From Thalia democratica (lineage: Eukaryota): DNA of 64,000 bases. The position numbers and the translations under genes are program-made. Below are positions 3,001-64,000 of the stretch, piece by piece (position 1 is the stretch's first letter; the number at the start of each line of letters is the position of its first letter). The stretch spans positions 77,810,001 to 77,874,000 of the forward strand of contig OZ241827.1 in assembly GCA_965202585.1 (NCBI GenBank). The letters run 5' to 3'. Below the pieces are notes generated by a model. It saw only the letters and a list, made by a program, of their open reading frames with translations, did not search any database and had not been told where the DNA came from.

Positions 3001-6000
3001 CTGATCAAGGATCACCTGATCCATTTAAGGTTAAATATAATTTGCTAATATTCCATTATCTTTAATTATTTTTAATATTAAATAAAATTTATTATAAGTT
3101 CTAGACTGTAGACTTTATACTTTTGTACATTTATATAGTATAAAACCATGTTTATTTAAGTAGAAAGTTAAAACAAATTTGTTACAGAACAACTGTTACG
3201 TCATAATTACTTTGAATGATGTCAACGAACATACCCCTGCTTTTATCAGTCAAAATTACCGAGCCCAGTTTTTAATCGATGGTGAAAACCCTAGTTTGCC
3301 TGAAACCCAACAGGTGTATCGCATGATTGAAGGTAGCAAGTTAGGAGAAATTATTTTACTTGTAGACGCAGTAGATGACGTTTTCGTCGAAATGGTAAAA
3401 TCACTTACACTATTGTTAAAGGTAAATACTTATTACAGTAATTGTAAATATATATTTTTTAGAACATTTTTTAAATTATAAAAACAATTTTACATCAATA
3501 CTTTGCTAACAAAATAAAAACTCTTATAGTAAACTCACATTTTAAAATATCATATTTACTAAACGTTAACTAAAATATTTTAGCTAGAACAGTATATTAT
3601 TGTTTCATAATAAAAAAAAATACTATATAAACTTAAATGTATACTTTTGTTTAAAGAATATTCTTAAAGTTTTACTAATAAACATTATTATGAGCGTTTT
3701 TTCAAAGTTTTTGGTTTTAAATAACAAAAGGCAATAGCACTTTTATAATTTTGTTTTCATAGCAAATATTTCGAATAATTCGAGAAATATAATTTTATAA
3801 TAAGTCAAACCAAACAGAAGTAATAAGATTATTTTGACTTTAATAACGTTTTTTAAAGACCTCACCTCTATAAAATTTTAATTAAAAAAAAAAAAGTTGA
3901 TCTTTTTAGTAAATGAAATCTTAGGTCGCTCTGTTGTATACAATGAGAAAATCAATCTTTTCTTTACGAACTTGCGCTATGAAGTATATTTTATTATATT
4001 TTCGATTTTAAATATTTTTTTTTGCTCACTTCCAAAACACTTTCAATTTATCCTAGACCGTATTTATTTTTATAAACTATTTTTTGTGTTTTCTAAGTGT
4101 TCTAAAATATTATTTTTTTTTTTCTAATGTACTAAATAATTTATAAATTATATAAATGTAAACAATTAGTAAATTAAATTTTTTCAAATTTAAAAAGTAA
4201 ATGATATTGAAAATCTTGACAAAAAAGTTCAAAACTAAACAAATTGGTTTCCTTAGTAGCATTACGTAAAAAAAAAGAATAAATGACAATTTTTGGTTCT
4301 AAGTTTTTTGAAATAAAACTACTAATTTAAAAACAGACAATGAGTTGGAAACGCGTCAGGTTTTAGTATAACTGACAATTATATGTCACATATTACTTTG
4401 CCACTTTGTAATAACTTTAAACTATCAAAAATTTTCAAAAGTTAAATTAAAATTGAACATTTTAGCAATGCAAAATCATTATTAGTTTCAGTTTGTTTAT
4501 TAGCTTTAGTTTTAGGCAAAATTATGAAATTTTATGAAATTAGTTTTAAAATTAGGTTGACCTTAGTAAAGTTATACATTTTATCAGATAGTTTGTTGAA
4601 TTTTTAAATTTTTGCAAAAGTTTAACCTATATAAAGTACAAGATATCCGTAGTTACTATAAAATAGTGGTTTTTAGTCCTAAAACATTTGCAATAAAATA
4701 ATTATCTTACTAGAAACATTTATGATTTGCATCAAAACAATAACAGATGTTTACAAAACTTTTAAAATCTACCTGACACTGATCTTTTTAAACATTGAAA
4801 GTTCTGACACATAATTCAATAATCCAATTGATACCAGTCTGCATCAAGTAACTTATACCGGTTTCAAAATAATTAGTAATGCTAATTGTTTTTAATATTT
4901 AATTACCTGTCAGATTAATCACCAATTCGTTTCCTCTGGTTTGTTAGAGATCAATGAACAAAAATAAAATTTCGTGAGTGTCATTTAGAAAATTAAATTA
5001 GTTATTAAATTTACTTTATTGGAATTCATTATTAATGTTTATTTTAGACAGACACGTGCTATTGAAAATTGTTGCTAACTAAACAGATTGAGATTTTTTA
5101 GTTAATACTTTTATTGTATAGCAGATTTAGGTAGCTATAAATGTATTCAACAATTTAAAGCAAATTTAAAGAAATTAGTTTATGTTACTATCAAAAACAC
5201 TATTAAAATAACAGTATATTACGTTTTAACAATTTAATGAAGCAGTTTGTTAACGATTTGTGCAAATTTTCCTAGTAGACTTTAGCACAAAGTTTTGTAG
5301 AGCTTTCAAGTCCCATTATGACGTACGACTGTTGAAATTTGCTGAAAACAAACAAAAGCACAAACTTTATGTCTGGCTCAAATTTATATTATTAAACAAA
5401 TATTCTGTACTTAGGCGCGTTAAAACATTTAAGAACCTAATATTTACCGTTTAATGTAGTTTTTTGAAAACCAAAGCTTTTCAAGAAATTAGTTCTTAAA
5501 AATCAGTTACTTATAAGTTAGTACTGGTTTGTATTAACCTAAATTATTAATAATCTTTTTTTTACGACATTGATGTATTAAATAAAACATTTAGTTTTTT
5601 TTTTTTGTTCAAGATGTTTGGACGTATATGTGTTTATTGTACAACACTAAAAATTATAAACATAACCTTATTTTTTTAGGCAACAACGCTGGAGTATGGA
5701 GAATTGACGAAACCACCGGTGGTTTGAGCGCTGTCAAGTGGCCAACAATTCAAAATGAAAACAGCGACATTGTGCGGACAGAAATTTTAACAGTAGAAGC
5801 TCGCGATGGCGGTCAAAATTCTCGCGCTTTAAGAATGAACGTTTCAATTGAAATAAGAAACTTTAGAGACAGTTCTCCTCAATTTAATAATGACGTCATT
5901 CATGTTAGCATCGCTGAAAACACAACTGTTGGAAGGTAAGATATTAACATAAACACTATTTAGTTATCAAAAGCAAATTAATAATTGTCAATTTTAATTT

Positions 6001-9000
6001 CAGCTTGGTTGCCAAGGTAACAGCATCCGGTCCTGCCGGTATAATTTATGACGTCACAACAGGTGATTCTGATCACTTCCGGTTGGATTGGTTCACGGGC
6101 AGGGTGACTATTTTGTTGCCGCTCGACTACGAAACTCGTCGCGATTACGTCTTGTGCGTCGAAGCGAGGGGCGGTGACGTAATGATGAAATCATTAATGC
6201 AATTAAATATTCATGTCACTGATGTTAATGATAACAGGTTAAAACTCTAACAATATAAATAACTTAAAATTTTAACAGCGATTGTTTTACAAACAAAAGT
6301 TTTGTTGTAGTAGTATAAAACGCAAAAATACATATTTTAGGCCTGTTCTTGATCAGACAAGATATTCATCCAAAATTTACGCGAATTCATCTGATCAAAG
6401 TGTAACGTCGCAATTATTTGACGAACAAGGTAACGTCTTAAAAGTGGAAGCGCATGATATAGATACTGGATTAGGGGTATCGATTAAGTACCAAATAATT
6501 GCTCTCTCATCTGAAGATCAGGATTTCATTGACGACAGATTTTTAGTGGACGAAAGAAGCGGTGCTATTCTGAAACTTAATGGAAACCTTCTCTTTGACC
6601 ATTCTTACAATAACATCTATCAATTCATGGTAAAACTAGTTTTTTTAGTGTATACGTTAAGAAAATCAGTTAAGTTAAAGATTTACTTTGATCAGTTATA
6701 GTGTTTTTTTTTAATTAAACATTTTTATTAAGGTTCAAGTGACAGACAGAGGAAGTCCTCCTCTTGTAGCAACTGAAAGAGCTTACGTCACTGTACAATC
6801 AATTTCTCATTATTCTTTAAAATTTGCTAAAAATCGCTACACGGTAGAAGTACAGCCACCTTTTGTGCCTGGATTTTTGATTCCAGCAAATTTAGAAGTC
6901 GTTGAAAACGGCTTCAATTCAAAATCAAAGTTAGAATACTTAATAGACCCGGAAAACTCATATTTACAAATAAACAGACACAATGGCGAAATTAAAACAT
7001 TTTCAAATCTAATTCCACATCAAAAAAAACCAAAACTAAATGTAAAAGTATCAACCAAAGAAACTAGTTCTTATACTATTGTCAAAATAGTTCTTCTTGA
7101 ACCTTATAGTGGTGATCTAAAATTAAAAGAGATATATGTCGAAGAAAATTTAAAAAAAGTATGTCAGTATAGTTTCATAACATATTTATTTTTAATTCAA
7201 ATTAAACAAAGATCTAATTCTGACGAATTGTGTATAAGAACTTTACTATTTTTCAACCTTTAATAAGGATTTTAAATTTTCAGGGAAAAGCATTGTATAC
7301 ATTGGCAAGTATTCACAACACAGTAGATGTTGACTGTGTTTACACTTTATTGAATCCAAATCCACATTTCAACGTTGTTGGATCTGCTATTCTTACCACC
7401 AATGTAACACTAGATAGAGAAACAAATTCTTATCATAAAGTACGTTACAAATGAATTAAAAAACTAATGTCAACATAATTAACATAAATCAAATAAATTT
7501 AGATTTATCACTATACTTAAGTTTTATTTAAGTTGTTGTATATTTAAACTATTAACAAACAAAATTAAAACTTTCAGCTGTTAGTTGAAACAAATTATCC
7601 AGCTTCAAGTCGAAGTAGTCGAACTGAAATAAAGGTAAATGTCGTAGATGTGAATGATAATGCACCTGAAATTTTACAACAACCGATTAACATATTTATA
7701 CCTAGAAATGGTAAAATTGGAACAGCTGTCAAACAGGTTAATATTCATTTAGGTGATATAACGTATTTCAAATCAAATTTAATATTTGATTTAAGGCTAA
7801 ATATTTATTTTACTACAATTGTTTATAGAATACTTAACAAACATATCTCCAGATCGAGGCAATTGACAGAAGTTTTGGTCCAAACTCCCAAATTAAATTC
7901 AGTTTGAACGGTCCTGGTACTAAATGCCTGAGAATAAATCCTAAAAGCGGATTGGTCACCACCAGAACTTACAAGTCACGTGAAGTCAGAACGACTAATG
8001 ACGTCACGATAATCGCGGAAGATCAAGGTAAACCCCAATTGCGAAAAGAAGTGAAAGCGACTTTGCACTTCACAAACGGAAACCCGCTTTCAAAAGAGGT
8101 GAAATCCCCTGTTTTTGTAAAAGCGCGGGAAAATTTACGCATAGGAAGTTTAGTGACTGATGAAATTGGATCGCAGTTTACAGATTCTGTTGAGAAAGCA
8201 AATTTTGAAATTGTTGATGGAGATCCTGAAAGTAAATTCCAAATTGATTTTAAAACTGGTAAGTTATTATCTCAAATTTATTTTGAATACAATATAATTT
8301 CTTTAAAAAATGAAATGAACAAGCGATTGTTACTAAACTAATTATTATTTAAAGTAAGCTATAAAAGTATTATAAAAAACTAGTAGTTTTCTTGAATATA
8401 AACCACTTTTTAGGAGCTTTATATACTCGAAAAAGTTTGGATAGAGAAAAACAAGATACTTACCAGTTACAAGTGAGAATATTAGAACAAAACAGAAACT
8501 CAATCGCTTCAGTAACTGTTTTTGTTAATATTCAAGACGAAAACGATAATCCACCTATTTTTCAAAATAGCTTTTATTCAGTAAAAATTAAAGAAAACTT
8601 GCCATCTAAATCGTTTGTTATCAGAGTAAGTTGATGTTAACTAGATATTTTTTTATTAAAAATAAAGTTGTTTTAAGTTTTAATTTATTTATGTTATAAT
8701 AGTTTTTATTTACAGTATAATCTGAGCTATACTCAACAAACTTTTCTTAAAAGATTGATTGTGAATGTGATCATGAATTTTTTACAATTTATTTTATCCT
8801 TTAATTTTGCTGTAACTCAACCTTAAGCTTTACAAATGACATTGTTTTGCCTAAAGTTTGAAGCTTAATTTTTAAAAGTGCGCATGAAATATGCGATTTA
8901 AAAATAATAGTTTTATATTTATTTAGGTACAAGCTACTGATGCAGACATAGAAAGCAACGCAATGATCAAATATACAATTCTATCCGGACACGAAAGTTT

Positions 9001-12000
9001 CGAAGTTGATGAAAATAGCGGAGTCATATCAACATCTGGTAATATTGACAGAGAAGAAGTTTCTCAGTTTATATTTACAGTAAGAGCAAGTGATTGTGGA
9101 AACCCGTCAATGTTTTCAGATGCTGAAGTTGTTGTTTTTGTTGATGATGTTAATGATAATCCTCCATTTTTCTCTAATGTAAGTGTTTTTGTTAAAGTAA
9201 ACATATCAGTGGAACCTTAAAAGCTTATATTTTCGTATAAAGTAACTAAAATTCACGATTTTTTTTCAATGGTTTATTTTTAAGTTTTTATTATTATTAT
9301 TTTTACTAGAAAGTAATGTCTTAAGAAGAACTTAACCTTTAGTAAAATGTTATTAATGCAGAAAAATGAAGTGTTATCTGTAAGCACTCTAATTGAGCCT
9401 GGATCAAAAATAGGTCAAGTAAGAGCTTACGATTTAGATGTTACTGACCAAAATAGTTTGAAATACTTCATTGAAACTGATGGTCCAATAAATATAGATA
9501 AGGAGTCAGGTTTGCTAATTTTATAAAATATTATTTTTATGAGTGTTCATTAAAAAACAATAAAGTTGAAAAAAATTAGTATGCAAAGCTTATAAGTTAT
9601 ATAAAATACTCAAATTTAAAATTTACTTATAAAATTTAATTTCTACAACGTTCCTACTTACAGGTGAAGTATTTTTAAATGATCTAACTGAACCATATGA
9701 AAAACATAACAATATTTATGCAATAACAATTGTTTCTGATGGAGTATATTTCACATCTACTAATCTTCAAATTAATTTTGTTACTAAATCTACACGAGTA
9801 TTAGAGTTTCATGATTGCTCAATAAAAAGCCTAAAGTTTTCCGTATAAAAGAAGATGTCCCAATAAACACTTTTTTCGGAAAAGTAAGTATACGCTAGTT
9901 TTACAAATATAGTTTTAAGGTACTTAGTTTAGTATTCCTATATTTTAACTAATATTTTTCAGCTAAATTTATCATCTGATTCTGTTAATCCAGTAATATT
10001 CACCATTGAAACGACAACTTCTGATTCTTCTCGATTTAGGGTAATTCCCTCAACTGGAGAGTTGTTCACTTCCATCAGAAGAGAGTTTCTCACATCTACA
10101 AATGACATCATAAGATTTGTTGTTACAGCTCAGTCGAGCTCAGGTTTAATAATTGTTTAAAACTTATTATATGTATATAAAAAATTGTGCTAAATTTTGG
10201 TTTTACCTTATAGTTTTAAACAACATACCTGATTATACTAGGTTAATTTCTTTCTAAAACGTCTAATTGGTTTATATATGATACTAATTTGACATAGACT
10301 TATTCAAAGATAACAACAAATTACGCTATTAATTTAAAAAAAAATGTTTTGAACTATTTTGATATATTCTCCTAGTTTATATAACTTGTTTACATATGTT
10401 ATAGAAATTAAGATAACAAAACAATTATTTTATATGTTACAACTTATTGAAAAGTTATTCGTTTACAGATATAGCAAGGTGTGAGACTGTTATTGTTATT
10501 CAAGACGTCAACAATAATAAACCTGAATTTGATAGAAAAAATTATCAGGGAATTGTCGTAATTAATCAAACGATTGCCGGTGAACATTTACTGAAAGTTT
10601 GTATTTTGGTTGTTAATTTTGCAATTTATTATAATAATAAGAAGAATTTATACTTATTTAAAACTAAAAAAACTAATTATGCAATAATTTAAAAGATAAA
10701 AGCATCTGATAATGACATTGGAGTGAATGGAAAAGTATCTTACAACTGGTACGATAAAAATAACAATGCTTTTCAATATTTTGATACTATTACTGATAGT
10801 GGAATAATCTATTTAAAAAAGCCACTTACAGAAAAAGGTAGGAACTTTAAATTGATTTTTTTTAATTCAAGTTTTTATTATAAATATGATTGAATAGTTA
10901 TTTAGCTTATAATAGTGGAAATGAAATGATATGTGCATATTTCAGTTTATTTTATTTGTTTTTCGTAATATAAAGTCAAATATTTGTTGAATGTCTCAGT
11001 CGTGAAACGAACGGAAGTTTTAAATTGAAGCAGACATTAATAAAAAAATAAATTTAACTCCTGTAACAATAACTTTATTGTCTGAAATAGTTTTACACTT
11101 ACTACTCATAACAGCACAGTTGCAAACAATTGATTAATTTGTTGCAGATGAAGAAAGTTTTAGTTTTTTTATTCAAGCAATAGACGGAGGTGGGAAATAT
11201 TCTCTTGTTGGAGTGAATATTAATGTTATTTCAACAACAATTCATTTACCAGTTTTTGAAAAAAGCATTATACACGTTGTTGTACTTGAAGATATAGCTA
11301 TACGATATAAAGTAAGTTTCCAATTTTTTTACAAATTGTCTTTGTATAATTAATCGTTAAATAAACTATGTGTATGCATTGTGACGAAAGAAACTTTCAG
11401 AAATAAGTTGAACAGTAAGTCACAAAATATTATATTTATTTCAAGTGTTATACAAACATTTAACTTATATTTAAAAACATACAATATAAGTTGAAATAGT
11501 AGAGAATAAAAACTGATTAGATTTAATTTATATATTATTCATTATAGATTGCTCAACCACAAGCTTTAGCAAAAAACCGAGAAATTTACTACAAATTTGC
11601 AAATCATCAAAGTAATTACTTTTATATATATATCAATGCTATCATAATAAACCATGATAACTTGGCAATAATTTTTTGTCAAGTACAAAACTGTTAAGTA
11701 ATTTTTGAAGTTTTCGTTGAAAACTATTTAAACCAAGTGAAAATTTTTGCTAAACAATAAATTAGTAAAGTAAAAAGGTATTTAATGAGAAAATAATCGT
11801 CATAACTAAGTTACAAATATGTGATAATAAAACAAACAGATGGTGATGAAACACAAATGAGAAACTTCAAAATAAACAAACTGAATGGAGCAATTACCCT
11901 AACACAAGAGTTAGATTATGAAAATAAAAATTATTTTGAGCTTATTGTTGTTGCATATGTAAGAGAAGAAACTGAACTTATGGCTGAATCTAAAGTAAGA

Positions 12001-15000: not shown

Positions 15001-16640
15001 AGATGACCCACTTATGAGCGACACTTCTCTCAACATACGTGTCATTGACGTCAATGACAACAAACCTACTTTTAACAACATCAATTTTCCTGTGAGTATA
15101 AACTGTTTGAATAAAAAGGTTTAAATAAAAAGCTAATGTTTTTTGTCTTTCAAATTAAAGATATTCGAAAGTCAACTATTATTTATTATTTTGTAAAAAG
15201 TTCAAATCTGGTCATAGTTCGTGCTTAAATCGTAATTTAGATTCAGTTTTCAAACAAGTTGTTATTTTCAGATATTCGTCAATGAAGATATCATTGATGA
15301 CGTCATAGCAACGATAACCGCTTTCGACAAGGACCAAGGCGCAGGGGGCGAGGTCAAGTACTCGTTGCTAAGCAACGAAGCGGACCAGCTGCCGTTTCAA
15401 TTGGATGAGGACAGCGGTCGGCTGTCAGTGGTCGAACCGGGTCTGGACTTTGAAGCCCGCCGTTCGTATGCCTTTGAAGTAGTTGCCAGGGACAACGGAA
15501 CTCCTTCCCTAGCAACGAGCGTCGACGTCGCTGTCAAAGTGAGAGACGTCAACGACTGTCGACCGCGGGTGGCGCTCAAGAGTTTGCATGACAACGTTGC
15601 GTTGCGTTGTCAAAGTGACGTCACGACAAAGTGCACTGCGAGCGTGTCGGAAGCAGAATGGAGAAACGTTTTTTCGGAGGAGGGCATAGTAACGGTGGGG
15701 GCGACGGATAATGACGTTGCCAAGGGAAACGCGGCCCCTTTTAAATTTAATCTCGACTCACAAATAGCAGGTTAAATAACTTGTTTGTTGTGTGTATACA
15801 TTTTTTTAGCTCAAACTTACTTATATAAGCATTTTAAAAAGCCCATTTCAACTTATTAGTTAATGTACGGTATATCTTTTTATACATGAAACATAATTTT
15901 ATTTTTTTTTATGAAGAAAAAATTAAAATAAAGTCATAGCTTAAACCAAACACTTTTCTTTTAACAGGTGAATTTGTTTTTAATAACAAAAATGTGCTGA
16001 TATCAAACAACCCGTACGAAATAGAAGACATTTCATCAGATAAAGCGGCTAAAACGTTCCATTTCACCATAACTGCTACTGACAGTGGAAATCTCGAATC
16101 TTTGCCTCTTTATTTAGAAGTTGTCATTTTGAAAGAAAGCAAGTATCCACCGGTTTTGATCTCTCAAAAGATTCAAATTATGACTACTGAAGGTTTGTTC
16201 AAATATAAACTAATTTCGAGTATTATAAAAGGATTTTATTATAACAACCAACATGTATACACGAAAAGATATATTAATAATTACCCAAACTTAGCTACCT
16301 TTTATACAACGGTCTTTATTTTACTGAATTGAATATTAATTATTCGTCTTAAACTAGTTTTTATTTTTACTGTTCTGTTTCAGATTACTTCAAAGGAGGA
16401 GTGATATCTTCAAAGCTGTACGCCACCGACAAGGACCCCCACGACTTGCAGCGGCTCACCTTCAAGATCGACTCGCTCGCCGACTTCGAGTCGTTTACGG
16501 TGAACCCCCTCACCGGCAAGCTGTCGGCGACCAATGGCGTGCGAGGTCGCCACAACGTCACGGTTGGCGTCAGCGATGGCAGCAGGTACTCGACGGGCCG
16601 GGTCGCCATCGAAGTGGTGAAAATTTCAAAGGAGTCGATT
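24..16640 (+). CDS. Cadherin-repeat ectodomain exons of copy A (about 22 repeats, exons 1-38)
   Basis: Repeat-end motifs include DKNDNQP (about 2670), DVNDNRP (6225), DVNDNAP (7648), DENDNPP (8538), DVNDNPP (9146), DVNNNKP (10504), DINDNPP (12155), DVNDNWP (13783), DVNDNAP (14478) and DVNDNKP (15047). YKLVGAADRNSLDKF and ITWVERP resemble the FAT1 EC12-14 region as I recall it. Confidence 0.9.
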
Positions 16641-19600
16641 CAGAGTTCGGTCCAGGTCACTTTCGAGGGGATTTCCCCAGAAGCGTACCTTTCGACGGTT
16701 CACGGCAAATTTTTAGCGGCCCTCGGTGACATTCTTCCAAGGGGTTCGAACCCCAGTGAAAATGTGGAAATTTTATCCTTGAAACGCTTGAATGATTTCA
16801 ATGCGCAGCTGGTGTTCAGCGTGAGGTCGCCGAAGCGTGACGGCCAGTACCTGAAAGTCGGCCGCCAGCTGAAGGACTCGCTGCCGCTGCTCACCGAGAA
16901 GGCGGGGGTGAGGGTTACGGACGTCAGGGGGGAGGAGTGCGACCTCGAGTGCGCCCACGAGTGCCGGCACGACGTAGTTGTGACGTCATCAGGGGAAAGT
17001 CCCGTCACCACGAAAAAGTGGAGCTTGCTGACCCCTCATTGGTTCGAACGCGAGCAGAAGTGCGTGTGCCGGAAAGGTCATGCGGGTGTGAATTGCGCTT
17101 CCGTTTGCGCTGGAGTAACGGACGTGTGCGAGGAAGTTGGCGGAAAGTGCGAGCTGGACGCGAACGAGGTGCGAGGCTACCGGTGCGCGCAGAAGAACCG
17201 AAGGAACAGCGCGGTTTCTTTCGGGGGAAATTCCCTGATCGAGTACAAGCTGAACAACCCTGAAGTGTTCAGTTTGTCGCTGAGGTTCAGAACCCGGCAG
17301 CGCGACGCAAAACTGCTGGAGGCCGCGGAAGAGTCGGGAGGCAACTTGGCGCGCGTCAGCGTCGACGAAGGGAAACTGAAGCTGGAGTTCGCGTGCGGGT
17401 TGGACGGCGGAAACATGCAAACCATGGAAATGAGCGAGTCGGAAATGAGCGACGGAAACTGGCATGACGTCACAATCGAACCCATTTCCGACAAAGATTG
17501 CGCTTATAGGTATGAAGTTTTTATTAATATTTACCATTAAAATTTTTATCAAGATTTTAATTGTAAGTTCGTAAAAAACTTATGCTTGTTACTAGTAAGA
17601 TATACTAAGTGATAGTTTTCTGGCTTAGAGTTTTATATTAGCTGCTTACTCTTATTATAACAACTTTTATTAATGCTAAAACATAACTACAAAAGATTGC
17701 GCTTAGATGTATTTAGCTTTAGTTTTCTTTAATAGTTATTTAGTTCTTTATCAGTTAGTTTTATATGCTTTTCTTTGCTAACTGTTAAAAAGCATGCAAT
17801 GGATCTAATTTTACCAATCAAGTTACGACATGTTGTTGTAAATAAACATTTGCATGTACTATATATTGCTATATATTAACTATAACTAATTTTGATTATT
17901 CTAAATAAATTTTTACAGGTTGGTAGTAGACAGTAAATACGAGGCTACAGGAGCATTGGGTGAGAACAAAAAAAGAAAGTTGAAATTTGACAAACTTACA
18001 CTGGGAGGATTAGATAAAAATAATGATGGTATGATTGGATGCATTGAAGAAATTAAAATTAACCAAATTTTAATTCAAGATCTTCTTCATTACAATAAAT
18101 TGAGAATTACTAAGAAACAAGAAGTTCTTGATAGGTTAGTTTCTGTTTCTATACTCTTTATACGTTAGAAGAATATATGGTTATGCTAAATAAAAACTAT
18201 ACAAAATTCCTAATATGTTTTAAAAAAAAGTATAAATCTAACTATTTTGATGCAACATAGACATTTAGTTTTAATAAGATGAATTTCATTGAAGTATCAA
18301 TAAACAATATGTTAAAATCTACCTAATTTTTCAGATGTAGCATGGATATTGGGTCTTGCGTGAATCATTTTTGTTACAATGGCGGTAAATGCGGACTAGA
18401 CATGTCTTTGGAGGGAAATTCCCCAATATGCAAGTGTAGTTCGGGTTATGCAGGGCCTGATTGTCGCAAAACGAAGGTTTGTGAAGACTTGCCGTGTAAA
18501 AATAAAGGAATTTGCCATTCACAAGCTGTTGAAAGTTTTAGGTTGGTGAAATTTAAAATAGTTTTAGTTATTTCCTCAAGTATTCAATACTTTTATTAAT
18601 AAAAAAAAGCTTAATCTTTCTCCTGGAACTTTAAAGTTAGTAACTAACTGTTTTTCAGTTACATTTTACTAGTACAAAATATGTTTAGTAATTTATGTCA
18701 AAATAAAAAGATGGGTGAGCATACTTTTTACAAATATGAACTAAATGTTTTTATGAACTAGTTCTTTGCTCACTTTTAGCAATTAGTAGTACTTTACTAA
18801 TAGGATATAAAAACCATTAGTTTTATCATTATCACAGATGCGAATGTAAAGAAGGTTTTGGAGGAGAATTTTGTGACGTCATATGCAAGGAGGGGTTCAC
18901 CGGAGTGAATTGTGACGTCATAATAAATAAATGTTTCAGTTACGATGAAAATTTTGCTTGCAACTGCTCTTTATCAAATGAAGGTAAGCTTTTTTACTAT
19001 GGATATTTGCTTTGGATGTAGGAATATGTAACTACAAGCAACAAACTAATTTTGACTGCAAACATATTCTAAAATTTTTAATATGTAAAAAATTTGCTGC
19101 GAATAAACGTAAAATTTGAAGTTTTCATGAGAATTGCTTTAAACACTTTTTTTTCATAATATGTAAAGTTTATTCAAATAAAACATTATGTTATCTTTTT
19201 AAGACGTTATTTACTAATATTAAACATATATGCTTTTAAAAGCTTAAGACTTTAAAATTCAACAGCAGTATTATAATCAACTACCATAGTATAATTTGTT
19301 TAATATGGATTCTTAAAGACGACTTTATCACTTGTTTATTAAAACTAATCCTAATGTTTAAATAGGGATGTATTTTTGTCACGCAATATTTCTTTTTTTT
19401 TTATGTCACGCAAAAACTTATTAAATCTACTATTTATTGAAAAGTAATAATAAGAACGTAATAAAATACTATTTATTAACTGTATGTCTAAAAAAAGTAT
19501 AAAAAAGTAGCATAAAAAGTAGGTAGTTGAACTTGAAAAATTTACTAAAAAAAAGTTTAAACAATTGTAATTGTTTAAAATAGCTTATAAGTTCCAAGTT

Positions 19601-22600
19601 TAAAAATTTTAGCTAAAAATTCAAATCAACAAAATAATAATGATGCTAACAGGTTGCAAAACTATCCTAGAAAATCAGACCAACGCGAAGAAATCATCAT
19701 TTCCTTATTTAATCCTCATAATTGTCATTTTAATTGTCATAATCGTTGCCACCATAGCAACTGCAGTCGGCTGCTACGTAAGAAGGAGGCGAGGAAAAAA
19801 GATGCGAACCGGAAGTACTATTTCCACTAAAGAAAAGTTTTATTTGACACAACTGAAACACAGAGAAGGTTTGAATGGCTTACATTAATTAATTTTCAAG
19901 TTTAATTTTATATAAGTCTTTGAAGTTTAATTCATTAAAAGCAAAAATTTTAACGATCTATAAAATGATTTATTTCATAGATCACTCGTCAGATGGAAAC
20001 CAGTCGATTCCAAAGCCACCGATTCCTGCAAGACCGGTTGATTATCAGAGATGTTCAAGAGAAATTATTGACAGCATGGTTGAACAAGTAAATATAATTA
20101 TTGTTATATATTCAGTTCTTAGTTTACAGTTTGCATACTTCTAATTACTACAATTTAACTATTTAATTATCTGCTTTTAAAAAATTTTCAGTTGAAAACC
20201 AAAAATGAAATCAACAATTTATCATTAAAAAAATTAATTACATGTTTTAAAATAATTTTTAAGGAGCTAAAGAACAGGAAACAGTCAAATGACGTATTCG
20301 ACAAAAGTATGACGTCATTCCAGGACAATGAAAAATTGACGTCATACCAGGATAATGGAAAGCTGACGTCATTGGCTTCCGATTCAACTTCGTTTCAGAA
20401 AATTCCCATGTCTTGGACTGACTATGAGCACAATCATGTAAGTAATATAATTGTTAACACCAAAAATATTAGCTCAATTTGAAGTTGTTATTTCTGTTAA
20501 TTAATTATTATAGTTCACACCTGTAAACTGACACAATGGTTATTATATTATTTTAACTATAATTAAAAAAAAATACAATCTTTATATTTATAAGTATGAC
20601 TAAATAAAATTTTAAGTTATTGTAAGCTTTCACTGACTGTTCATTAAAACTATAATTTATTTTTTTAAGTAGATATTTAATTTCGTTTAAACAAAATGCT
20701 TCAACTAATTTTTAAACCATCACAGTTCAGCGGAAGTATATCTGGTTGTTCGTCTTACAGCAAAAGAACTCCGATCCCGTCTGCGAAATCACCGAAACTG
20801 TTCACCAGGATTCCCAGATTCCAGCAGCAGTCAGTTCACAAAGTAGCAAGCAAGCAGTCCATCGCAGAACAGCGTAAGTTTTATAACAGTAGTCGAGTAG
20901 TAGTCAGGCGTAGATTGATTCTTTATTAACTTTTTCAGTGGACTTTCTTGTTTTATATATTATTTTAATACACTTTTCTCTGTATTTTTAGCAGTGTTTT
21001 AGACTCTAATAATAATATGATTTTTTCGGAAAACATTTAAAAAAATCCAATAGTTTTTTTTAAAGCTTTTTTTTATTTGAAAAACATGTTAGTTCTCACT
21101 TTTTTAAATTCTTATAATGTAAAATTATCTTTAAGACTTGATCCCTTATCATGTATAATTGTTAATAAATTAATTCAATCACAGTTCTAAAATATTAACA
21201 GTATGTTAGCTAGACGTAGATATACACTGATTTTGTTTTAATTTTTCAGTAAACCTTTATAATTTTTAGATTTTCAAATTTTTAACATTTATTTTACTTT
21301 ATTGTATCTTTTGAAGAAATTTTTGATTCGTAACGTATTTTTATTACAAGATATACTTACAAGTTTAAAAATATTTAATATCTAATTTCAGTTCTAAACA
21401 AAGTTAAAGAAATATTAATTTTTGATTAGAACATCTTTAAAATGTAAATTTTGTAACTTTGTTTTTTTTTTCTCACTGTTTTCTCAACTAAAATTTGTTT
21501 AACCACAGTTTTGTAATTCTTAACAGTTGGAAGAAAACCAAAAAAATTGAATTTAGCAGAATTCAACCGTAATACAGGTCTATAAATAAAAAGCTTGGTT
21601 ATGGTGATTTTTGTACAAACTTAGTATGTACTTAAAAACGTGGTGTTAATCATTATGATAAAATAACTTCAACTGCCTTTTCTGAAATTATCTGAATTTT
21701 GAAAGTTACTTGTTTATGTTAATTTTTAAAATCTTTAACATGAAAGACTTGTTAAAATTACATAAAACATTGAAAAATAATTTTAATTTCATATAGTTAG
21801 GTATATCCAGTTATAAGCTTTTGCTTTATGTTTCAAAATTTAAGTATAAGTATGTCAACTATTATTATCTATCCTGTTATACTTAGTGGTTTTACATCTG
21901 TTGTACTGTTGTTTGTTTCTAAGTTTCATTTTAAAACTTTTATCTAAATGAAAAATTTCTAAGTTTACCATGGTTATTAAAAAAAAATGTGTTAATTTAT
22001 CTGGCTTCAAAAATTTTAGTTTTTATTCTAAACGTATTTTTTTAAACTCAAATGATAACACTTATTTTAACTGCCTTTTATTTTTAGCATGTAAATTATT
22101 AAGTTGTGATGAATTTCATTTTTCGTTCAAAACAAAAGTTATTAATGGTTTTATTAAGTTGTTATTTTGTAATTCGAAATATAACTTGTTACTTTTGTTA
22201 CGAAATCTCAAAGCATCTTGATAAATCTCATAGCATGTGGTTTTTGCATGTGTATTATCATGTAACTTGCATTTATTTCAGTATGTTATATCAGGTTTTT
22301 CTAAACATGTTTATCTTTTTTACAAGAAGTTGTTTTATTAATTGCATATTTTGAAAAGAAAATTAGTTATCTCAATAATTATTAAAAAGATTCTTAAGAA
22401 CCCATTAACTTTTTAAACTCAATGATAAAATGTTAACTTTTTATGTTTAACTTAAAAAGAAACTTAAAAAAAGTTGTAAAAGTTTCTAAAACTCAATTAT
22501 AAAATTTGACGAATCCTTTTTAATACTTAAATAATCTTATTCACCAGATTACGCATGGGACGTTTCTGATTGGATTAAAAACAACTCGTCGGCGGCCAAT

Positions 22601-23483
22601 CACGTTCCTGAACATGTGACGTCAGTACCAGTGAGGCTGAACAACAGATCCGACGGTGTTACGTCATCAAACAATCGCGTGACGTCACATTACAATTTGG
22701 CTGGGAGAAAACCGAAAAGGAAGGGGAGAAAATGCAGCGACGCTTCCACAACAGATTCAAAACTGGTTTGTATAAATTTATAAACTTAAAAAGTTATATA
22801 AGTCTAAACATATATATCTAGACATAAAATAGACAATTAAATTGGAAAAAAAATTAACATTTGAAGCTTTTATATTATAAGTATATAAATATTTACGTAA
22901 GTTACAAGTCAAGATCATTAAATGACAAAGTAATTATTTATTAGTTTTGATTCGAGTATTTATATTTTCAAACCAGATACGTCATCCGCAAGACGACGAA
23001 AGCTCCCAGTATGACGTCAGTAGCGAGGTTACGACGGCTGCCAGGCAACCCGGGCGCTTATTACGTAGCAACTATGACGTCACCAACCCCCGATTCGAAC
23101 CTTCGAACCTCCTGCCATCCGTTTCCATGGAGCACGAGCGTTTCTCATTGGACGAAAAAATCTCTGAGGCCTCGGAGGATTTCTATGGCGACACGGACGA
23201 GTACGAAATTTCCGCTCCGATGCCCACCGACATTATGACGTCACTTTTGGAGGGCGAGATGGAGGTGGACATGCCGACTCCGGCGAGGGCGCGCAAAAAC
23301 AAGTTTCACCCCGACCAGTACCTGCCCGCCGTCGTCACCATGGCAACCAGTTCCTCGTCGTCGGTCGACGGTGACGTCACTGTCCAGTTGCTTGGCAACC
23401 AGCTGCAGATGTCGTCGCTTTCCGACTTGGAAGAAGATGACGTCAACAATTCGTTGATGTTACGTCATAATGACAACGCTTGA
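24..23483 (+). CDS. FAT1: Fat-type atypical giant cadherin (FAT1/2/3-kugelei group), copy A; 47 exons in window, 5' end outside window, two apparent 1-bp frameshifts (about 3386 and 9827)
   Basis: Manual splicing with GT-AG introns gives phase-compatible exons encoding many cadherin repeats (DxNDNxP, LDRE/LDYE, DxDxG), then a Cys-rich region, LamG, EGFs, TM and tail. The tail has KPPIPARPVDY, YAWDVSDW and FHPDQYLP, which I recall as close to FAT1/3 PPQVPVRPISY, YHWDTSDW and NQYLP. The symbol denotes the FAT1/2/3 group, not proven 1:1 orthology. Confidence 0.9.
16384..17509 (+). CDS. Large GC-rich exon 38: last cadherin repeat, membrane-proximal Cys-rich/EGF-like region and first half of the laminin G domain
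   Basis: tttcag acceptor at 16383, AG|gtatga donor at 17509, 1126 nt open. Contains CVCRKGHAGVNC and SFGGNSLIEY...LSLRFRTRQRDAKLL...SDGNWHDVTI (LamG pattern). Matches ORF 16401..17540. Confidence 0.9.
17919..18134 (+). CDS. Exon 39: C-terminal half of the laminin G domain
   Basis: LVVDSKY...LTLGG...GMIGCIEEIKIN is the typical LamG C-terminal pattern. Phase 2-2 boundaries are compatible with both neighbours. Confidence 0.85.
18335..18983 (+). CDS. EGF-like exons 40 (18335-18541) and 41 (18838-18983)
   Basis: CVNHFCYNGGKC...CKCSSGYAGPDC, CEDLPCKNKGIC...CECKEGFGGEFC; GT-AG boundaries in compatible phases. Confidence 0.9.
18845..18922 (+). repeat. 39-bp coding tandem duplication (CKEGFGGEFCDVI / CKEGFTGVNCDVI)
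   Basis: Two adjacent 39-nt units, each ending in tgtgacgtcata. Confidence 0.85.
19653..19868 (+). CDS. Exon 42: transmembrane helix and basic stop-transfer
   Basis: FPYLILIIVILIVIIVATIATAVGCYV followed by RRRRGKK; aacag acceptor and G|gtttga donor. Confidence 0.92.
19981..23483 (+). CDS. Cytoplasmic-tail exons 43-47 (19981-20087, 20264-20437, 20726-20873, 22548-22765, 22977-23483)
   Basis: All five exons splice in frame to the TGA at 23481-23483. They contain KPPIPARP, YAWDVSDW and FHPDQYLP. Confidence 0.85.
20309..20389 (+). repeat. 27-bp coding tandem repeat, 3 units (MTSFQDNEK / LTSYQDNGK / LTSLASDST)
   Basis: TGACGTCA recurs at 20310, 20337 and 20364, exactly 27 nt apart. Units 1 and 2 are near-identical. 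Confidence 0.8.
21527..21577 (+). CDS. Candidate 51-nt phase 1-1 cassette exon in the cytoplasmic tail (L-GRKPKKLNLAEFNRNT-D)
   Basis: ttcttaacag acceptor and CAG|gtctat donor; 17 codons with no stop, frame-preserving between exons 45 and 46. There is no transcript evidence and the intronic part of the donor is weak. Confidence 0.5.
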
Positions 23484-36527: not shown

Positions 36528-36595
36528 GTCAAATTTACACTGCAAAAGAGCTGGTACCAAATGTACTTGATGGATTAAAACAAATTTCGTTCGTT
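36528..36595 (+). pseudogene. Short cadherin exon of copy B (GQIYTAKELVPNVLDGLKQISFV)
   Basis: ttctag acceptor and gtaagt donor; phases link the 31420-31550 exon to the 38113 exon. Confidence 0.7.
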
Positions 36596-61933: not shown

Positions 61934-64000
61934 CTACCTAATTTTTCAGATGTAGCATGGATATTGGGTCTTGCGTGAATCATTTTTGTTACAACGGCGG
62001 TAAATGCGGACTAGACATGTCTTTAGAGGGAAATTCCCCAATATGCAAGTGTAGTTCGGGTTATGCAGGGACTGATTGTCGCAAAAGGAAGGTTTGTGAA
62101 GACTTGCCGTGCAAAAATAAAGGAATTTGCCATTCACAAGCTGTTGAAAGTTTTAGGTTGTTGAAATTTAAAGTTGTTTTAGTTATTTCCTCGAATATTC
62201 AATACTTATATTAATAAAAAAAGCTTAATCTGTTTTACAGATATGAATTTAATGTTTTTATGAACTAGTTCTTTGCTCACTTTTAGCAATTAGTAGTACT
62301 TTACTTATGGGATATAAAAACCATTAGTTTTATCATTATCACAGATGCGAATGTAAAGAAGGTTTTGGAGGAGAATTTTGTGACGTCATATGCAAGGAGG
62401 GGTTCACCGGAGTGAATTGTGACGTCATAATAAATAAATGTTTCAGTTACGATGAAAATTTTGCTTGCAACTGCTCTTTATCAAATGAAGGTAAGCTTTT
62501 TTACTATGGATATTTGCTTTGGATGTAGTAATATGTAACTACAAGCAACAAACTAATTTTGACTGCAAACATATTCTAAAATTTTTAATATGTAAAAAAT
62601 TTGCTGCGAATAAACGTAAAATTTGAAGTTTTCATGAGAAATGCTTTAGACACTTTTTTTTCATAATATGTAAAGTTTATTCAAAAAAAACTCTATGTTA
62701 TCTTTTTAAGACGTTATTTACTAATATTAAACATATATGCTTTTAAAAGCTTAAGACTTTAAAATTCAACAGCAGTATTATAATCAACTACCATAGTATA
62801 ATTTGTTTAATATGGATTCTTAAAGACGACTTTATCACTTGTTTATTAAAACTAATCCTAATGTTTAAATAGGGATGTATTTTTGTCACGCAATATTTCT
62901 TTTTTTTTTATGTCACGCAAAAACTTATTAAATCTACTATTTATTTAAAAGTGATAATAACAACGTAATAAAATACTATTTATTAACTGTATGTGTAAAA
63001 AAATTATAAAAAAGTAGCATAAAAAGTACGTAGTTGAACTTGGAAAATTCATAGAAAAAAAAGCTTAAACAATTGTAATAGTACAAAATAGCTTATAAGT
63101 TCCAAGTTTAAAAATTTTAGCTGAAAATTCAAATCAACAAAATAATAATGATGCTAACAGGTTGCAAAACTATCCTAGAAAATCAGACCAACGCGAAGAA
63201 ATCATCATTTCCTTATTTAATCCTCATAATTGTCATTTTAATTGTCATAATCGTTGCCACCATAGCAACTGCAGTCGGCTGCTACGTAAGAAGAAGGCGA
63301 GGAAAAAAGATGCGAACCGGAAGTACTATTTCCACTAAAGAAAAGTTTTATTTGACACAACTGAAACACAGAGAAGGTTTGAATGGCTTACATTAATTAA
63401 TTTTCAAATTTAATTTTATATAAGTCTTTGAAGTTTAATTCATTAAAAGCAAAATATTAACGATCTATAAAATGACTTATTTCATAGATCACTCGTCAGA
63501 TGGAAACCAGTCGATTCCAAAGCCACCGATTCCTGCAAGACCGGTTGATTATCAGAGATGTTCAAGAGAAATTATTGACAGCATGGTTGAACAAGTAAAT
63601 ATAATTATTGTTATATATTCAGTTCTTAGTTTACAGTTTGCATACTTCTAATTACTACAATTTAACTATTTAATTATCTGCTTTTAAAAAATTTTCAGTT
63701 GAAAACCAAAAATGAAATCAACAATTTATCATTAAAAAAATTAACTACATGTTTTAAAATAATTTTCCAGGAGCTAAAGAACAGGAAACAGTCAAATGAC
63801 GTATTCGACAAAAGTATGACGTCATTCCAGGACAATGAAAAATTGACGTCATACCAGGATAATGGAAAGCTGACGTCATTGGCTTCCGATTCAACTTCGT
63901 TTCAGAAAATTCCCATGTCTTGGTCTGACTATGAGCACAATCATGTAAGTAGTATAATAAATAACACCAAAAATATTAGCTCAATTTGAAGTTGTTATTT
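61934..64000 (+). repeat. 6320-bp tandem module unit 2 (runs off window end)
   Basis: Near-identical to 55614-57680. One coding difference seen: WTD to WSD at about 63924. Confidence 0.95.
61950..63944 (+). CDS. EGF, TM and first cytoplasmic exons of module 2 (incomplete in window)
   Basis: Same exons as module 1 shifted by 6320 and all open. Confidence 0.7.

What the first reader, a model, noticed from the sequence alone, without database searches (positions are those of the whole stretch)
5891..23445. TGACGTCA (CRE palindrome) is strongly enriched, only in exons and in both stop-free frames
Seen: 20 exact copies in copy A, at 5891, 6049, 7999, 15046, 15298, 15616, 16981, 17465, 18874, 18913, 20310, 20337, 20364, 22617, 22680, 23012, 23075, 23236, 23372 and 23438. 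All are exonic, and I found none in the introns or in 23.5-38 kb. A simple composition model predicts about 0.1-0.2 in 10 kb of exon. They are read both as DV(T/I/N/S) and as (M/L/V)TS, and TTACGTCA/TGACGTAA variants add several more. The duplicates retain them. Known: TGACGTCA is the CREB/ATF bZIP site and contains a CpG whose methylation blocks binding. Inference: a DNA-level code overlaid on the protein, such as exonic bZIP sites, methylation protection, or a motif-biased mutation or repair process, that is shaping amino-acid content.
Basis: partly seen in the sequence, partly recalled or inferred. Interest (0 to 1): 0.8.

Follow-up and report, generated by a model that had tools for sequence, protein, structure and literature searches.

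The report
CRE palindrome written into coding exons
One eight-letter DNA word, the classic binding site of CREB-type gene regulators, is packed about 60 to 100 times more often than expected into the protein-coding pieces of this animal's Fat cadherin gene, strongly enough to bend the protein's own sequence, which points to a second, unexplained code laid over the genetic code.

Summary
Confirmed. TGACGTCA occurs 43 times in the window (0.33 expected). Twenty are in copy A at exactly the listed coordinates, all inside exons of a tandemly duplicated Fat-type protocadherin gene of an AT-rich, probably tunicate genome. There are none in 42.8 kb of intron and intergenic DNA.

Amino-acid-preserving codon shuffles give 1.3-6.4 copies (maximum 13 in 5000) against 20 observed, and 0.3 when the motif codons are frozen. 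It is the only outlier 8-mer.

Peptides able to encode the motif (xDV[IMTNKSR], [LMV]TS) are about 3.5-fold over-represented. Reversed dipeptides and Ciona or vertebrate Fat orthologues show no such excess, so protein sequence is bent. In GC3-rich exons 20 of 26 permissive sites are realised; in AT-rich exons 0 of 7.

The full palindrome is needed and the flanks are symmetric (RTGACGTCAY). A metagenomic homologue (L004) has 12 copies in 4 kb, two of them intronic.

Best reading (0.4): selected sites for a two-fold symmetric reader, most simply a CREB/ATF-type bZIP dimer, marking exons. Main rival (0.3): an RNA-level exon or splicing element. The mechanism is unproven.

First readers noted this motif in about 30 other windows of this genome. 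No paper was found.

The parts
5680..23483 (+). Copy A of a Fat-type protocadherin gene (3' about two thirds): 43 predicted exons, 9048 nt of CDS, with cadherin repeats, laminin-G, EGF, a TM helix and a cytoplasmic tail ending at stop codon 23481-23483
   Evidence: Gene model. Pfam Cadherin, Laminin_G_2 and EGF on exon translations. Best named homologue is Ciona intestinalis protocadherin Fat 1.
5891..5898 (.). TGACGTCA, DV frame (N-D-V-I), ends 37 nt before the donor
6049..6056 (.). TGACGTCA, DV frame (Y-D-V-T), 45 nt after the acceptor
7999..8006 (.). TGACGTCA, DV frame (N-D-V-T)
15046..15053 (.). TGACGTCA, DV frame, at the cadherin consensus I-D-V-N-D-N; same site carries the motif in L004 (540); ends 38 nt before the donor
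15298..15305 (.). TGACGTCA, DV frame (D-D-V-I), 26 nt after the acceptor
15616..15623 (.). TGACGTCA, DV frame (S-D-V-T)
16981..16988 (.). TGACGTCA, TS frame (V-T-S) in the 1126-nt laminin-G exon; aligned V-T-S of L004 (2098) also carries it
17465..17472 (.). TGACGTCA, DV frame (W-H-D-V-T); same site carries the motif in L004 (2540) and L012 (269); ends 37 nt before the donor
18874..18881 (.). TGACGTCA, DV frame (C-D-V-I) in an EGF exon; first copy of a 39-bp duplication
18913..18920 (.). TGACGTCA, DV frame (C-D-V-I); second copy of the 39-bp duplication
20310..20371 (.). Three TGACGTCA (20310, 20337, 20364), TS frame (M/L/L-T-S), one per unit of a 27-bp tandem repeat in the cytoplasmic tail
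22617..22624 (.). TGACGTCA, TS frame (V-T-S), tail exon
22680..22687 (.). TGACGTCA, TS frame (V-T-S), tail exon; a one-off variant GTTACGTCA (V-T-S) lies between at 22659
23012..23019 (.). TGACGTCA, DV frame (Y-D-V-S), last exon
23075..23082 (.). TGACGTCA, DV frame (Y-D-V-T), last exon
23236..23243 (.). TGACGTCA, TS frame (M-T-S), last exon
23372..23379 (.). TGACGTCA, DV frame (G-D-V-T), last exon
23438..23445 (.). TGACGTCA, DV frame (D-D-V-N), last exon, 38 nt before the end of the stop codon
44019..60631 (.). 18 TGACGTCA of copy B (38109-61933), each at the position homologous to a copy-A site. The two copy-A sites 16981 and 17465 fall in the stretch that copy B lacks (A 16848-18317).
62381..63878 (.). 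5 TGACGTCA in a further 99.9%-identical tandem copy of the EGF-TM-tail module (61314-64000, about equal to 54994-57680)

Best explanation
TGACGTCA here is a real signal superimposed on the coding sequence, not a by-product of codon or amino-acid usage. I hold that part at about 0.95.

It is read as a two-fold symmetric site of about 10 bp, RTGACGTCAY, in which both halves are required. The simplest reader is a dimeric basic-leucine-zipper protein of the CREB/ATF class bound to the double-stranded DNA of exons. Natural selection keeps a high density of such sites in and next to exons. In the better-kept exons about 3 of 4 places where the protein sequence permits the word actually spell it. In weakly constrained parts of the protein (the cytoplasmic tail) the amino acids themselves have drifted to D-V and T-S strings that can spell it.

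What the bound factor does is inferred, not shown. The most likely role is to mark exon chromatin in a genome whose introns are very AT-rich: keeping it open or unmethylated, or slowing the polymerase so that exons are recognised.

Shown: the enrichment, its independence from codon usage, the distortion of the protein, the symmetry of the site, and its presence in a second lineage.

For: - Enrichment beyond coding constraints. There are 20 copies against 1.29 (gene-wide synonymous shuffle), 2.47 (dinucleotide-preserving), and 3.17 and 6.36 (the same two shuffles confined to each exon). No shuffle out of 5000 exceeds 13. With motif codons frozen, 0.3 new copies arise per shuffle.
- It is the only outlier 8-mer (z = 11), and no other 6-mer stands out.
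- Both halves are needed. Half-sites TGACG/CGTCA (24 against 18.3) and the total CpG count (386 against 386) are not enriched. One-off variants show only a weak halo (11 against 4.9).
- The symmetry extends beyond the 8-mer. There is a purine at -1 in 27 of 32 sites and a pyrimidine at +1 in 26 of 32 (P = 4e-4 and 3e-5), in both the window and L004.
- The word is exactly the canonical CRE, one of 256 possible 8-bp palindromes (established knowledge: CREB/ATF bZIP dimers bind TGACGTCA).
- The protein is bent. xDV[IMTNKSR] occurs 23 times against 6.4 expected and [LMV]TS 10 against 2.9 (tail: 7 against 0.6). VD and ST are not enriched, and Ciona, hagfish, turtle and platypus Fat proteins are not enriched.
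- It is not tied to translation or mature mRNA. L004 has two copies in a 49-nt intron.
- A second lineage shares it. L004 has 12 copies in 4094 bp (0.11 expected) at 40% protein identity, with three sites shared and the rest at different places. L012 keeps the W-H-D-V site.
- Unchecked first-reader notes from this genome place CRE-like sites at fixed distances upstream of tRNA and small-RNA genes, which would mean a DNA-binding reader exists.
Against: - A DNA-bound factor gives no obvious reason for the word to avoid introns. There are 0 copies in 42.8 kb of non-exon DNA, where a 100-fold enrichment would give about 12-14, although introns are free to evolve.
- The density, one per about 260 bp in GC3-rich exons of an adhesion-protein gene, is far above normal transcription-factor site use.
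- Nine of 20 copies lie 26-46 nt from an exon end and none lie closer (post hoc). L004's intronic copies sit next to the two splice sites. Both observations fit a splicing role at least as well.
- No binding, chromatin or methylation data exist.
- The A-versus-B comparison has no power to show present-day selection: 0 of 144 motif positions changed against 2-3 expected.
- The flank preference of CREB/ATF proteins is recalled from memory, not tested.
Confidence: 0.4

Rival explanations
1. RNA-level exon signal. UGACGUCA in the pre-mRNA is bound by a splicing or exon-identity factor, or copies pair with each other (a palindrome is self-complementary) to fold the transcript. This helps the spliceosome find GC-richer exons among very AU-rich introns.
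For: - Strict exon restriction in this window.
- Nine of 20 copies lie 26-46 nt from an exon end and none lie closer than 26. Three independent copies end 37-38 nt before a donor.
- L004's two intronic copies lie 12 nt after the donor and end 16 nt before the acceptor. They form an 8-bp hairpin across the 49-nt intron.
- Neighbouring exonic copies pair in predicted folds. In 3 of 6 close pairs the helix extends 3 bp beyond the motif, against 9 of 184 for non-neighbour pairs.
- R/Y flanks would also give A-U, G-C or G-U pairs.
- An unchecked first-reader note reports the motif at three splice acceptors of another gene.
Against: - No RNA-binding protein or splicing enhancer with this motif was found (and my own knowledge).
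- A single-strand binder gives no reason for a perfect, symmetric palindrome.
- The density is highest in L004, whose ~50-nt introns should need exon definition least.
- The helix extension is absent in all 4 close pairs of L004.
- The positional tests are post hoc and based on 20 sites. One of the '38 nt' cases is measured to the stop codon, not to a splice site.
Confidence: 0.3
2. Molecular drive without function. A motif-biased repair, gene-conversion or transmission bias creates or preserves TGACGTCA, as DNA-uptake sequences or very-short-patch repair skew word frequencies and peptides in bacteria.
For: - The near-perfect sharpness of the word: 20 perfect copies against 11 one-off variants.
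- Its ability to override protein sequence in weakly constrained regions.
- Several copies were multiplied by local duplication.
Against: - A repair or conversion bias should act on introns too, yet non-exon DNA shows no excess of the word or of its one-off variants.
- Intron GC is flat (0.17-0.25) right beside exons with GC3 of 0.7, so there is no spill-over of a biased conversion tract.
- No such eukaryotic mechanism is known to me.
Confidence: 0.1
3. Relic. The motif was selected in a compact, GC-richer ancestor in which gene bodies were nearly all exon (like L004). In this expanded, AT-drifting genome it merely survives where amino-acid constraint shields 5 of its 8 positions, and it is no longer used.
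For: - L004 has the higher density and shows no exon restriction.
- AT-rich exons (GC3 < 0.3) have 0 of 7 permissive sites realised.
- The commonest variants are G:C-to-T:A changes (TTACGTCA, TGACGTAA).
- Third positions of GC3-rich exons diverge between copies A and B as fast as those of AT-rich exons.
Against: - 20 of 26 permissive sites are still perfect in GC3-rich exons, although each holds 2-3 synonymous positions.
- AT-rich exons show no leftover excess of permissive peptides: 1.8 per kb against 5.0 per kb, and mostly the structural DVNDN.
- Most sites are not shared with L004, which implies turnover rather than inheritance.
- Young local duplications carry the motif.
Confidence: 0.08
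4. By-product of composition: D-V and T-S dipeptide use plus codon bias, a repeat family, or an assembly artefact.
For: - GAC, GTC, ACG and TCA are reasonably common codons here.
- DVNDN is a structural cadherin consensus, and it explains most of the few copies seen in other relatives.
Against: - All four amino-acid-preserving shuffles fall far short of the observed count.
- Flanks are unrelated apart from two local duplications: median identity 27.5%.
- Only 1 of 7 DVND sites in the window carries the motif.
- The motif is in frame at conserved residues in independent metagenome assemblies.
Confidence: 0.02

Closest known systems
cAMP response element (CRE), the binding site of CREB/ATF basic-leucine-zipper dimers
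   Same: Identical 8-bp palindrome with a central CpG. Both half-sites are required. Symmetric purine/pyrimidine flanks, as expected for a homodimer on double-stranded DNA.
   Different: Known CREs sit singly or in pairs in promoters and enhancers. Here the word is confined to coding exons at up to one per 120-260 bp, and the scan's notes suggest this holds genome-wide. Binding by a bZIP protein is untested.
Dual-use codons ('duons'): transcription-factor sites inside human coding exons, proposed to bias codon choice (Stergachis et al. 2013; the concept as cited in papers listed)
   Same: A transcription-factor-type motif overlaps coding sequence, and synonymous codon choice is skewed towards the motif.
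   Different: Duons are a weak, disputed, many-motif statistical effect. Here there is one word, 60-100-fold enriched. 77% of permissive sites in GC3-rich exons are realised, and the amino-acid sequence is visibly changed.
Exonic splicing enhancers
   Same: Exon-restricted short words overlaid on codons. There is a hint of preferred distance from splice sites.
   Different: Known enhancers are degenerate, mostly purine-rich, strand-specific RNA motifs. This one is a sharp, perfect palindrome. It also occurs in a tiny intron of a relative and is densest in a gene with ~50-nt introns.
Over-represented genomic words of bacteria: DNA uptake sequences of Neisseria and Haemophilus, and Chi (see PMC1939737 and PMC1626085 listed; otherwise my own knowledge)
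   Same: A single 8-10-bp word hundreds of times above expectation, lying largely in coding regions and skewing the encoded peptides.
   Different: Those arise from uptake or recombination bias in prokaryotes and are not limited to coding DNA. This is an animal nuclear gene, and no corresponding drive mechanism is known.
M26/CRE meiotic recombination hotspot of fission yeast (ATGACGT bound by Atf1-Pcr1; my own knowledge)
   Same: A CRE-type word acting inside a coding sequence, through a bZIP dimer, on a chromosomal process other than promoter activation.
   Different: Hotspot motifs tend to be lost by conversion, not accumulated. No recombination data exist here, and flat intron GC argues against conversion tracts.

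Membership tests
CRE / CREB-ATF bZIP binding site | Sequence is the full palindrome TGACGTCA with both half-sites | tested here: met
   43 exact copies. Half-sites alone are not enriched (24 against 18.3).
CRE / CREB-ATF bZIP binding site | Two-fold symmetric flank preference, as for a homodimer on duplex DNA | tested here: met
   R at -1 in 27 of 32 sites and Y at +1 in 26 of 32. That CREB/ATF proteins prefer these flanks is recalled, not tested.
CRE / CREB-ATF bZIP binding site | Located in promoters or enhancers, typically near transcription starts | tested here: not met
   All copies lie inside coding exons spread over 18 kb of gene body.
CRE / CREB-ATF bZIP binding site | Occupied by a bZIP protein; binding blocked by methylation of the central CpG | not testable with these tools
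   No chromatin, binding or methylation data. The only indirect contrast is CpG o/e of 1.22 against 0.65 between motif-bearing and motif-free exons.
Dual-use codons (duons) | Transcription-factor motif overlaps coding sequence, and synonymous codon choice is biased towards it | tested here: met
   20 observed against 1.3-6.4 in four kinds of amino-acid-preserving shuffle. 20 of 33 permissive sites are realised.
Dual-use codons (duons) | In vivo footprint of a factor on the exon | not testable with these tools
   Needs DNase or ATAC footprinting.
Exonic splicing enhancer | Enriched in exons relative to introns | tested here: inconclusive
   Met in the window: 20 in 9 kb of exon against 0 in 42.8 kb of non-exon. 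In L004, however, 2 of 12 copies lie in one 49-nt intron.
Exonic splicing enhancer | Concentrated near splice sites | tested here: inconclusive
   Nine of 20 lie 25-50 nt from an exon end against 3.8 expected (P about 0.006, window chosen after seeing the data). None lie within 25 nt.
Exonic splicing enhancer | Strand-specific RNA motif that changes splicing when mutated | not testable with these tools
   A palindrome reads the same on both strands. The functional assay was not possible.
Codon-usage / dipeptide by-product | Count reproduced when synonymous codons are shuffled with the protein kept | tested here: not met
   Maximum of 5000 shuffles is 6, 9, 10 and 13 for the four schemes, against 20 observed.
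Dispersed repeat or transposon-derived word | Copies share extended flanking similarity | tested here: not met
   Median identity over +/-20 nt flanks is 27.5%. Only the 27-bp and 39-bp local duplications reach about 50%.
Regional GC-biased conversion or mutation bias | Neighbouring non-coding DNA shares the compositional shift | tested here: not met
   Flanking-intron GC is 0.17-0.25 whatever the exon GC3 (rho = 0.09).

The most novel reading that the evidence does not exclude
A tunicate lineage uses one transcription-factor-type palindrome, RTGACGTCAY, as a genome-wide mark of exons. A dimeric reader on DNA, or copy-to-copy pairing in the pre-mRNA, distinguishes exons from extremely AT-rich introns. 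Selection for this mark is strong enough to rewrite synonymous sites and, in loosely constrained regions, the amino-acid sequence of many proteins. This would be a second, readable code laid over the genetic code in an animal.
Probability: 0.35. Interest if true: 0.92.

Novelty: new variant of a known kind. Interest (0 to 1): 0.8.

Why it matters
Overlapping codes in coding DNA, such as splicing enhancers and exonic transcription-factor sites, are usually weak, degenerate and statistically disputed.

Here a single sharp word is 60-100 times over-represented in exons. It fills three quarters of the places where the protein allows it in the GC3-rich exons, and it measurably changes which amino acids the protein uses. 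That would make the long-argued question of how much non-protein information constrains coding sequence directly testable in one organism: by mutating a defined 8-mer, by footprinting, and by population genetics.

It would also bear on how exons are recognised or protected in very AT-rich genomes, and on why exons of one gene can differ from 4% to 74% GC at third codon positions.

Because a distant homologue from a compact genome shows the same trait, the system is probably old in its lineage and can be dated by comparison.

Tried and rejected
- **Composition or codon artefact.** Rejected by four shuffle schemes and by freezing the motif codons.
- **Repeat family.** Rejected by flank comparison. 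Only a 27-bp tandem repeat and a 39-bp duplication multiply copies.
- **Conservation between copies A and B as a test of selection.** 0 of 144 motif positions differ, but only 2-3 changes are expected at the exon rate, so the test has no power.
- **Stronger synonymous constraint in GC3-rich exons.** Not seen: 4.2% against 3.4% third-position divergence.
- **Regional GC bias or biased conversion.** Rejected, because intron GC is flat.
- **Moderate enrichment in other homologous loci.** L001, L007, L008, L009 and L013 have 1-4 copies per 21 kb against about 0.3 expected. Most of these copies sit at the structural cadherin DVNDN consensus, so I do not count them as evidence for the trait.
- **More relatives from metagenomes.** The 9-sequence alignment was too divergent to search with. 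The 3-sequence alignment returned only two short loci with one copy each. One Logan contig had no DNA available.
- **Other enriched words.** None beyond overlaps and one-off variants of the motif.
- **3' UTR as a test of an mRNA-level role.** The first AATAAA lies 73 nt after the stop, so the UTR is too short to be informative.
- **Literature.** Ten full-text searches were run: TGACGTCA with exons, tunicate, Oikopleura, coding sequences and palindrome; larvacean motifs; UGACGUCA; duons; appendicularian and salp genomes. None found a description of this enrichment (papers checked).

Full report
**Observation**

An exact search finds TGACGTCA 43 times in the 64-kb window. Dinucleotide-preserving shuffles of the window give 0.33 (largest 2). 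The other 23 lie in 44019-63878, and there are none between 23445 and 44019. The word makes up 43 of all 206 NNACGTNN octamers; the next most frequent, TTACGTCA, has 9.

A self-comparison shows why there are two sets:
- Copy A (20-24747) is repeated as copy B (38109-61933) at 83-97% identity.
- B lacks A's 16848-18317.
- A 6.3-kb 3' module of B is repeated once more at 99.9% identity (54994-57680 is about equal to 61314-64000).

**What the locus is**

Long open frames on the + strand encode cadherin repeats, a laminin-G domain, EGF domains, a transmembrane helix and a tail. Pfam confirms Cadherin, Laminin_G_2 and EGF on exon translations.

An exhaustive profile search with the 379-residue laminin-G exon gives metagenomic fragments as best hits (30-41% identity; one short fragment at 71%). 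The best named protein is Ciona intestinalis protocadherin Fat 1, followed by vertebrate FAT1/FAT3. The gene is therefore a Fat-type protocadherin of a chordate, most likely a tunicate with a very AT-rich genome: window GC is 28%, introns 21%. The species was not identified.

**Exon map**

I wrote a small splice-aware dynamic-programming gene finder. It uses codon log-odds trained on tblastn-supported segments, GT-AG introns and frame consistency, and I retrained it once. It does not use the motif as such.
- Models made independently for A and B agree exon by exon from 5680/43808 onwards.
- Donors read AAG|GTAAGT, and acceptors are T-rich followed by CAG.
- Copy A from 5680 to the stop at 23483 has 43 exons and 9048 nt of CDS.
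- All 43 motif copies fall inside predicted exons.
- In copy A, 13 copies are read xxT-GAC-GTC-Axx (D-V) and 7 are read xTG-ACG-TCA (T-S). The third frame would be a TGA stop.

**Is it more than chance and more than coding?**

Expected copies in the 9050 nt of copy-A exons are 0.11-0.34 for Markov orders 0-2.

| Shuffle scheme | Mean | Maximum |
|---|---|---|
| Synonymous codons permuted gene-wide | 1.29 | 6 |
| Gene-wide, dinucleotides also preserved | 2.47 | 9 |
| Synonymous codons permuted within each exon | 3.17 | 10 |
| Within each exon, dinucleotides also preserved | 6.36 | 13 |

The observed count is 20. These controls are conservative, because they recycle the motif's own codons. With those codons frozen and everything else shuffled, only 0.3 new copies arise per shuffle.

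Further specificity checks:
- TGACGTCA is the only outlier 8-mer (z = 11). Every other high scorer overlaps it.
- Outside the motif, no 6-mer stands out except the one-off remnant ACGTCA.
- Half-sites (24 against 18.3) and total CpG (386 against 386) are not enriched.
- One-mismatch variants show a weak halo (11 against 4.9, P = 0.004).

So the codon-usage explanation is refuted. The signal is the whole palindrome.

**Exons against the rest**

Non-exon DNA of the window (42.8 kb, 22% GC) has no copy against 0.12-0.14 expected. A 100-fold enrichment would give 12-14. One-off variants there are at expectation (7 against about 5). In this genome the enrichment is therefore specific to exons. The first AATAAA lies 73 nt after the stop, so the 3' UTR is too short to say anything.

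**Does it shape the protein?**

Peptides that can encode the word are over-represented against shuffles of the protein's own residues:
- x-D-V-[IMTNKSR] occurs 23 times against 6.4 expected (z = 7).
- [LMV]-T-S occurs 10 times against 2.9 (z = 4.2).
- In the 457-residue tail, [LMV]-T-S occurs 7 times against 0.6 (z = 8).
- The reversed dipeptides VD and ST are at expectation.
- The same statistics on Fat proteins of Ciona, hagfish, turtle and platypus show no excess beyond the small baseline from the cadherin consensus DVNDN.

Of the 33 permissive sites, 20 spell the motif. Four of the 13 others are one letter off.

**Two kinds of exon**

- Third-position GC ranges from 0.04 to 0.74 among exons of this one gene.
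- Exons with GC3 >= 0.3 (5.2 kb) hold 26 permissive sites, of which 20 are realised.
- Exons with GC3 < 0.3 (3.8 kb, mainly 6733-7736 and 8414-14516) hold 7, of which none is realised. Five of those 7 are the structural DVND.
- Flanking-intron GC is flat (0.17-0.25) and uncorrelated with exon GC3 (rho = 0.09). This excludes a regional mutation or conversion bias.
- GC3 rises with exon length (rho = 0.40, P = 0.008).
- CpG o/e is 1.22 in GC3-rich exons, 0.65 in AT-rich exons (with TpG/CpA excess) and 0.74 in introns.
- Third positions diverge between A and B equally fast in both exon classes.

I cannot explain this split.

**Shape of the site**

Pooling the 20 copy-A sites and the 12 of L004, position -1 is a purine in 27 of 32 and position +1 is a pyrimidine in 26 of 32 (P = 4e-4 and 3e-5 against exon composition). 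Further out no preference is seen. The unit is thus a two-fold symmetric RTGACGTCAY. Flanks are otherwise unrelated (median identity 27.5%), except within a 27-bp tandem repeat (three copies, 20310-20373) and a 39-bp duplication (18874/18913).

**Relatives**

- **L004.** This is a 4094-bp metagenome contig encoding a homologue at 40% identity. It has 40% GC, introns of about 50 nt, and 12 copies of the word (0.11 expected): ten in exons, in both frames, and two inside one 49-nt intron.
  - Three window sites are shared with L004: I/N-D-V-N-D-N, V-T-S and W-H-D-V. The others are at different places in the two genes.
  - The intron with two copies precedes the EGF exon. The window homologue of that exon has two copies within the exon itself.
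- **L012.** This is 71% identical in protein, with an AT-rich intron like the window's. It keeps the W-H-D-V copy, and the last 100 nt of that exon are 96% identical.
- **Other homologous loci.** They carry 0-4 copies per 21 kb. Most of these sit at DVNDN, so I do not use them.

The trait is therefore shared by at least two quite different genomes, and it is not tied to translation or mature mRNA.

**Position and pairing (suggestive only)**

- Nine of 20 copies lie 26-46 nt from an exon end (3.8 expected, P about 0.006, bin chosen after seeing the data), and none lie nearer. Three independent copies end 37-38 nt before a donor.
- Because the word is self-complementary, neighbouring copies pair in predicted RNA folds.
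- In 3 of 6 close pairs in the window, the helix extends 3 bp beyond the word, against 9 of 184 for distant pairs. It does so in none of the 4 close pairs of L004.

**Test of present selection**

None of the 144 motif positions differs between A and B. At the exon rate (2.2% overall; by block 2.6% and 0.95%), only 2-3 changes are expected, so the test has no power.

**Interpretation**

Firmly established: a sharp, symmetric 8-10-bp signal is superimposed on the coding sequence. It is independent of codon usage, it is strong enough to alter the protein, it is restricted to exons in this genome, and it is present in a second lineage.

Most likely reader: a dimer on double-stranded DNA. The word is exactly the canonical CRE (one of 256 possible 8-bp palindromes), both halves are needed, and the flanks are symmetric. 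That points to a CREB/ATF-type bZIP protein. I give this 0.4.

Its weakness is that a DNA-bound factor does not explain why large, freely evolving introns have none.

The main rival (0.3) is an RNA-level exon or splicing signal, possibly acting through copy-to-copy pairing. It explains the exon restriction, the distance from exon ends and the splice-site-adjacent intronic copies of L004. It does not explain the exact CRE identity or the highest density in a gene with tiny introns.

The remaining readings are less likely:
- A functionless drive (0.1) is disfavoured by the clean introns and flat intron GC.
- A relic of a compact ancestor (0.08) is disfavoured by the 77% realisation in GC3-rich exons and by site turnover.
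- A composition artefact (0.02) is refuted.

**Context from the scan and the literature**

First-stage notes on about 30 other windows of this genome report the same word in the exons of unrelated genes. Others report CRE-like sites at fixed positions upstream of tRNA and small-RNA genes, and the word at splice acceptors. These notes are unchecked, and I could not test them because only this window is readable. No follow-up verdict was shown for them.

Ten full-text searches found no description of such an enrichment. Two tunicate genome papers that I opened do not mention it.

The nearest known ideas are dual-use codons, exonic splicing enhancers and the over-represented uptake or Chi words of bacteria. 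None matches in sharpness, in scale, or in being exon-restricted in an animal.

Noticed in passing
window 5680-23483: Exons of one gene fall into two classes. One has GC3 0.33-0.74 with CpG o/e 1.22. The other has GC3 0.04-0.29 with CpG o/e 0.65 and TpG/CpA excess. Flanking introns are uniformly 17-25% GC. GC3 rises with exon length.
   Followed up: partly
window 20-24747, 38109-61933 and 54994-64000: Tandem duplication of the Fat gene at 83-97% identity. Copy B lacks A's 16848-18317 (most of the laminin-G exon and the next exon). In its place B carries a piece matching A's 3' flank (24128-24747). A 6.3-kb EGF-TM-tail module is repeated again at 99.9%. Divergence at codon positions 1, 2 and 3 and in introns is 2.0, 1.5, 3.1 and 4.6%, so both copies have been under purifying selection.
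   Followed up: partly
L004:2993-3041: A 49-nt intron of a compact homologue holds two TGACGTCA copies 22 nt apart. One is 12 nt after the donor and the other ends 16 nt before the acceptor AG. They pair into an 8-bp hairpin in the predicted fold. All L004 introns are about 50 nt.
   Followed up: partly
window 20310-20373 and 18866-18928: A 27-bp in-frame tandem repeat (2.4 units) in the cytoplasmic tail and a 39-bp duplication in an EGF exon each begin with the motif. Local duplication thus multiplies copies.
   Followed up: yes
window 17410-17509 versus L012:190-296: The last ~100 nt of the laminin-G exon, including the motif and the donor, are 96% identical to a metagenome fragment whose upstream part is only about 70% identical. 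The introns that follow are both AT-rich but unalignable.
   Followed up: no
window 24747-38109: The spacer between the two gene copies contains weak cadherin-like open frames (for example 30968-31144 and 31420-31550) without any TGACGTCA. These are probably decayed or AT-rich 5' exons of copy B.
   Followed up: no
L008:19042-20310 and L013:19129-20909: Transposase-like open frames lie next to the Fat homologues on two long metagenome contigs: FAM200/ZBED5-type on L008, and HTH_psq plus DDE_1 (pogo-type) on L013.
   Followed up: no
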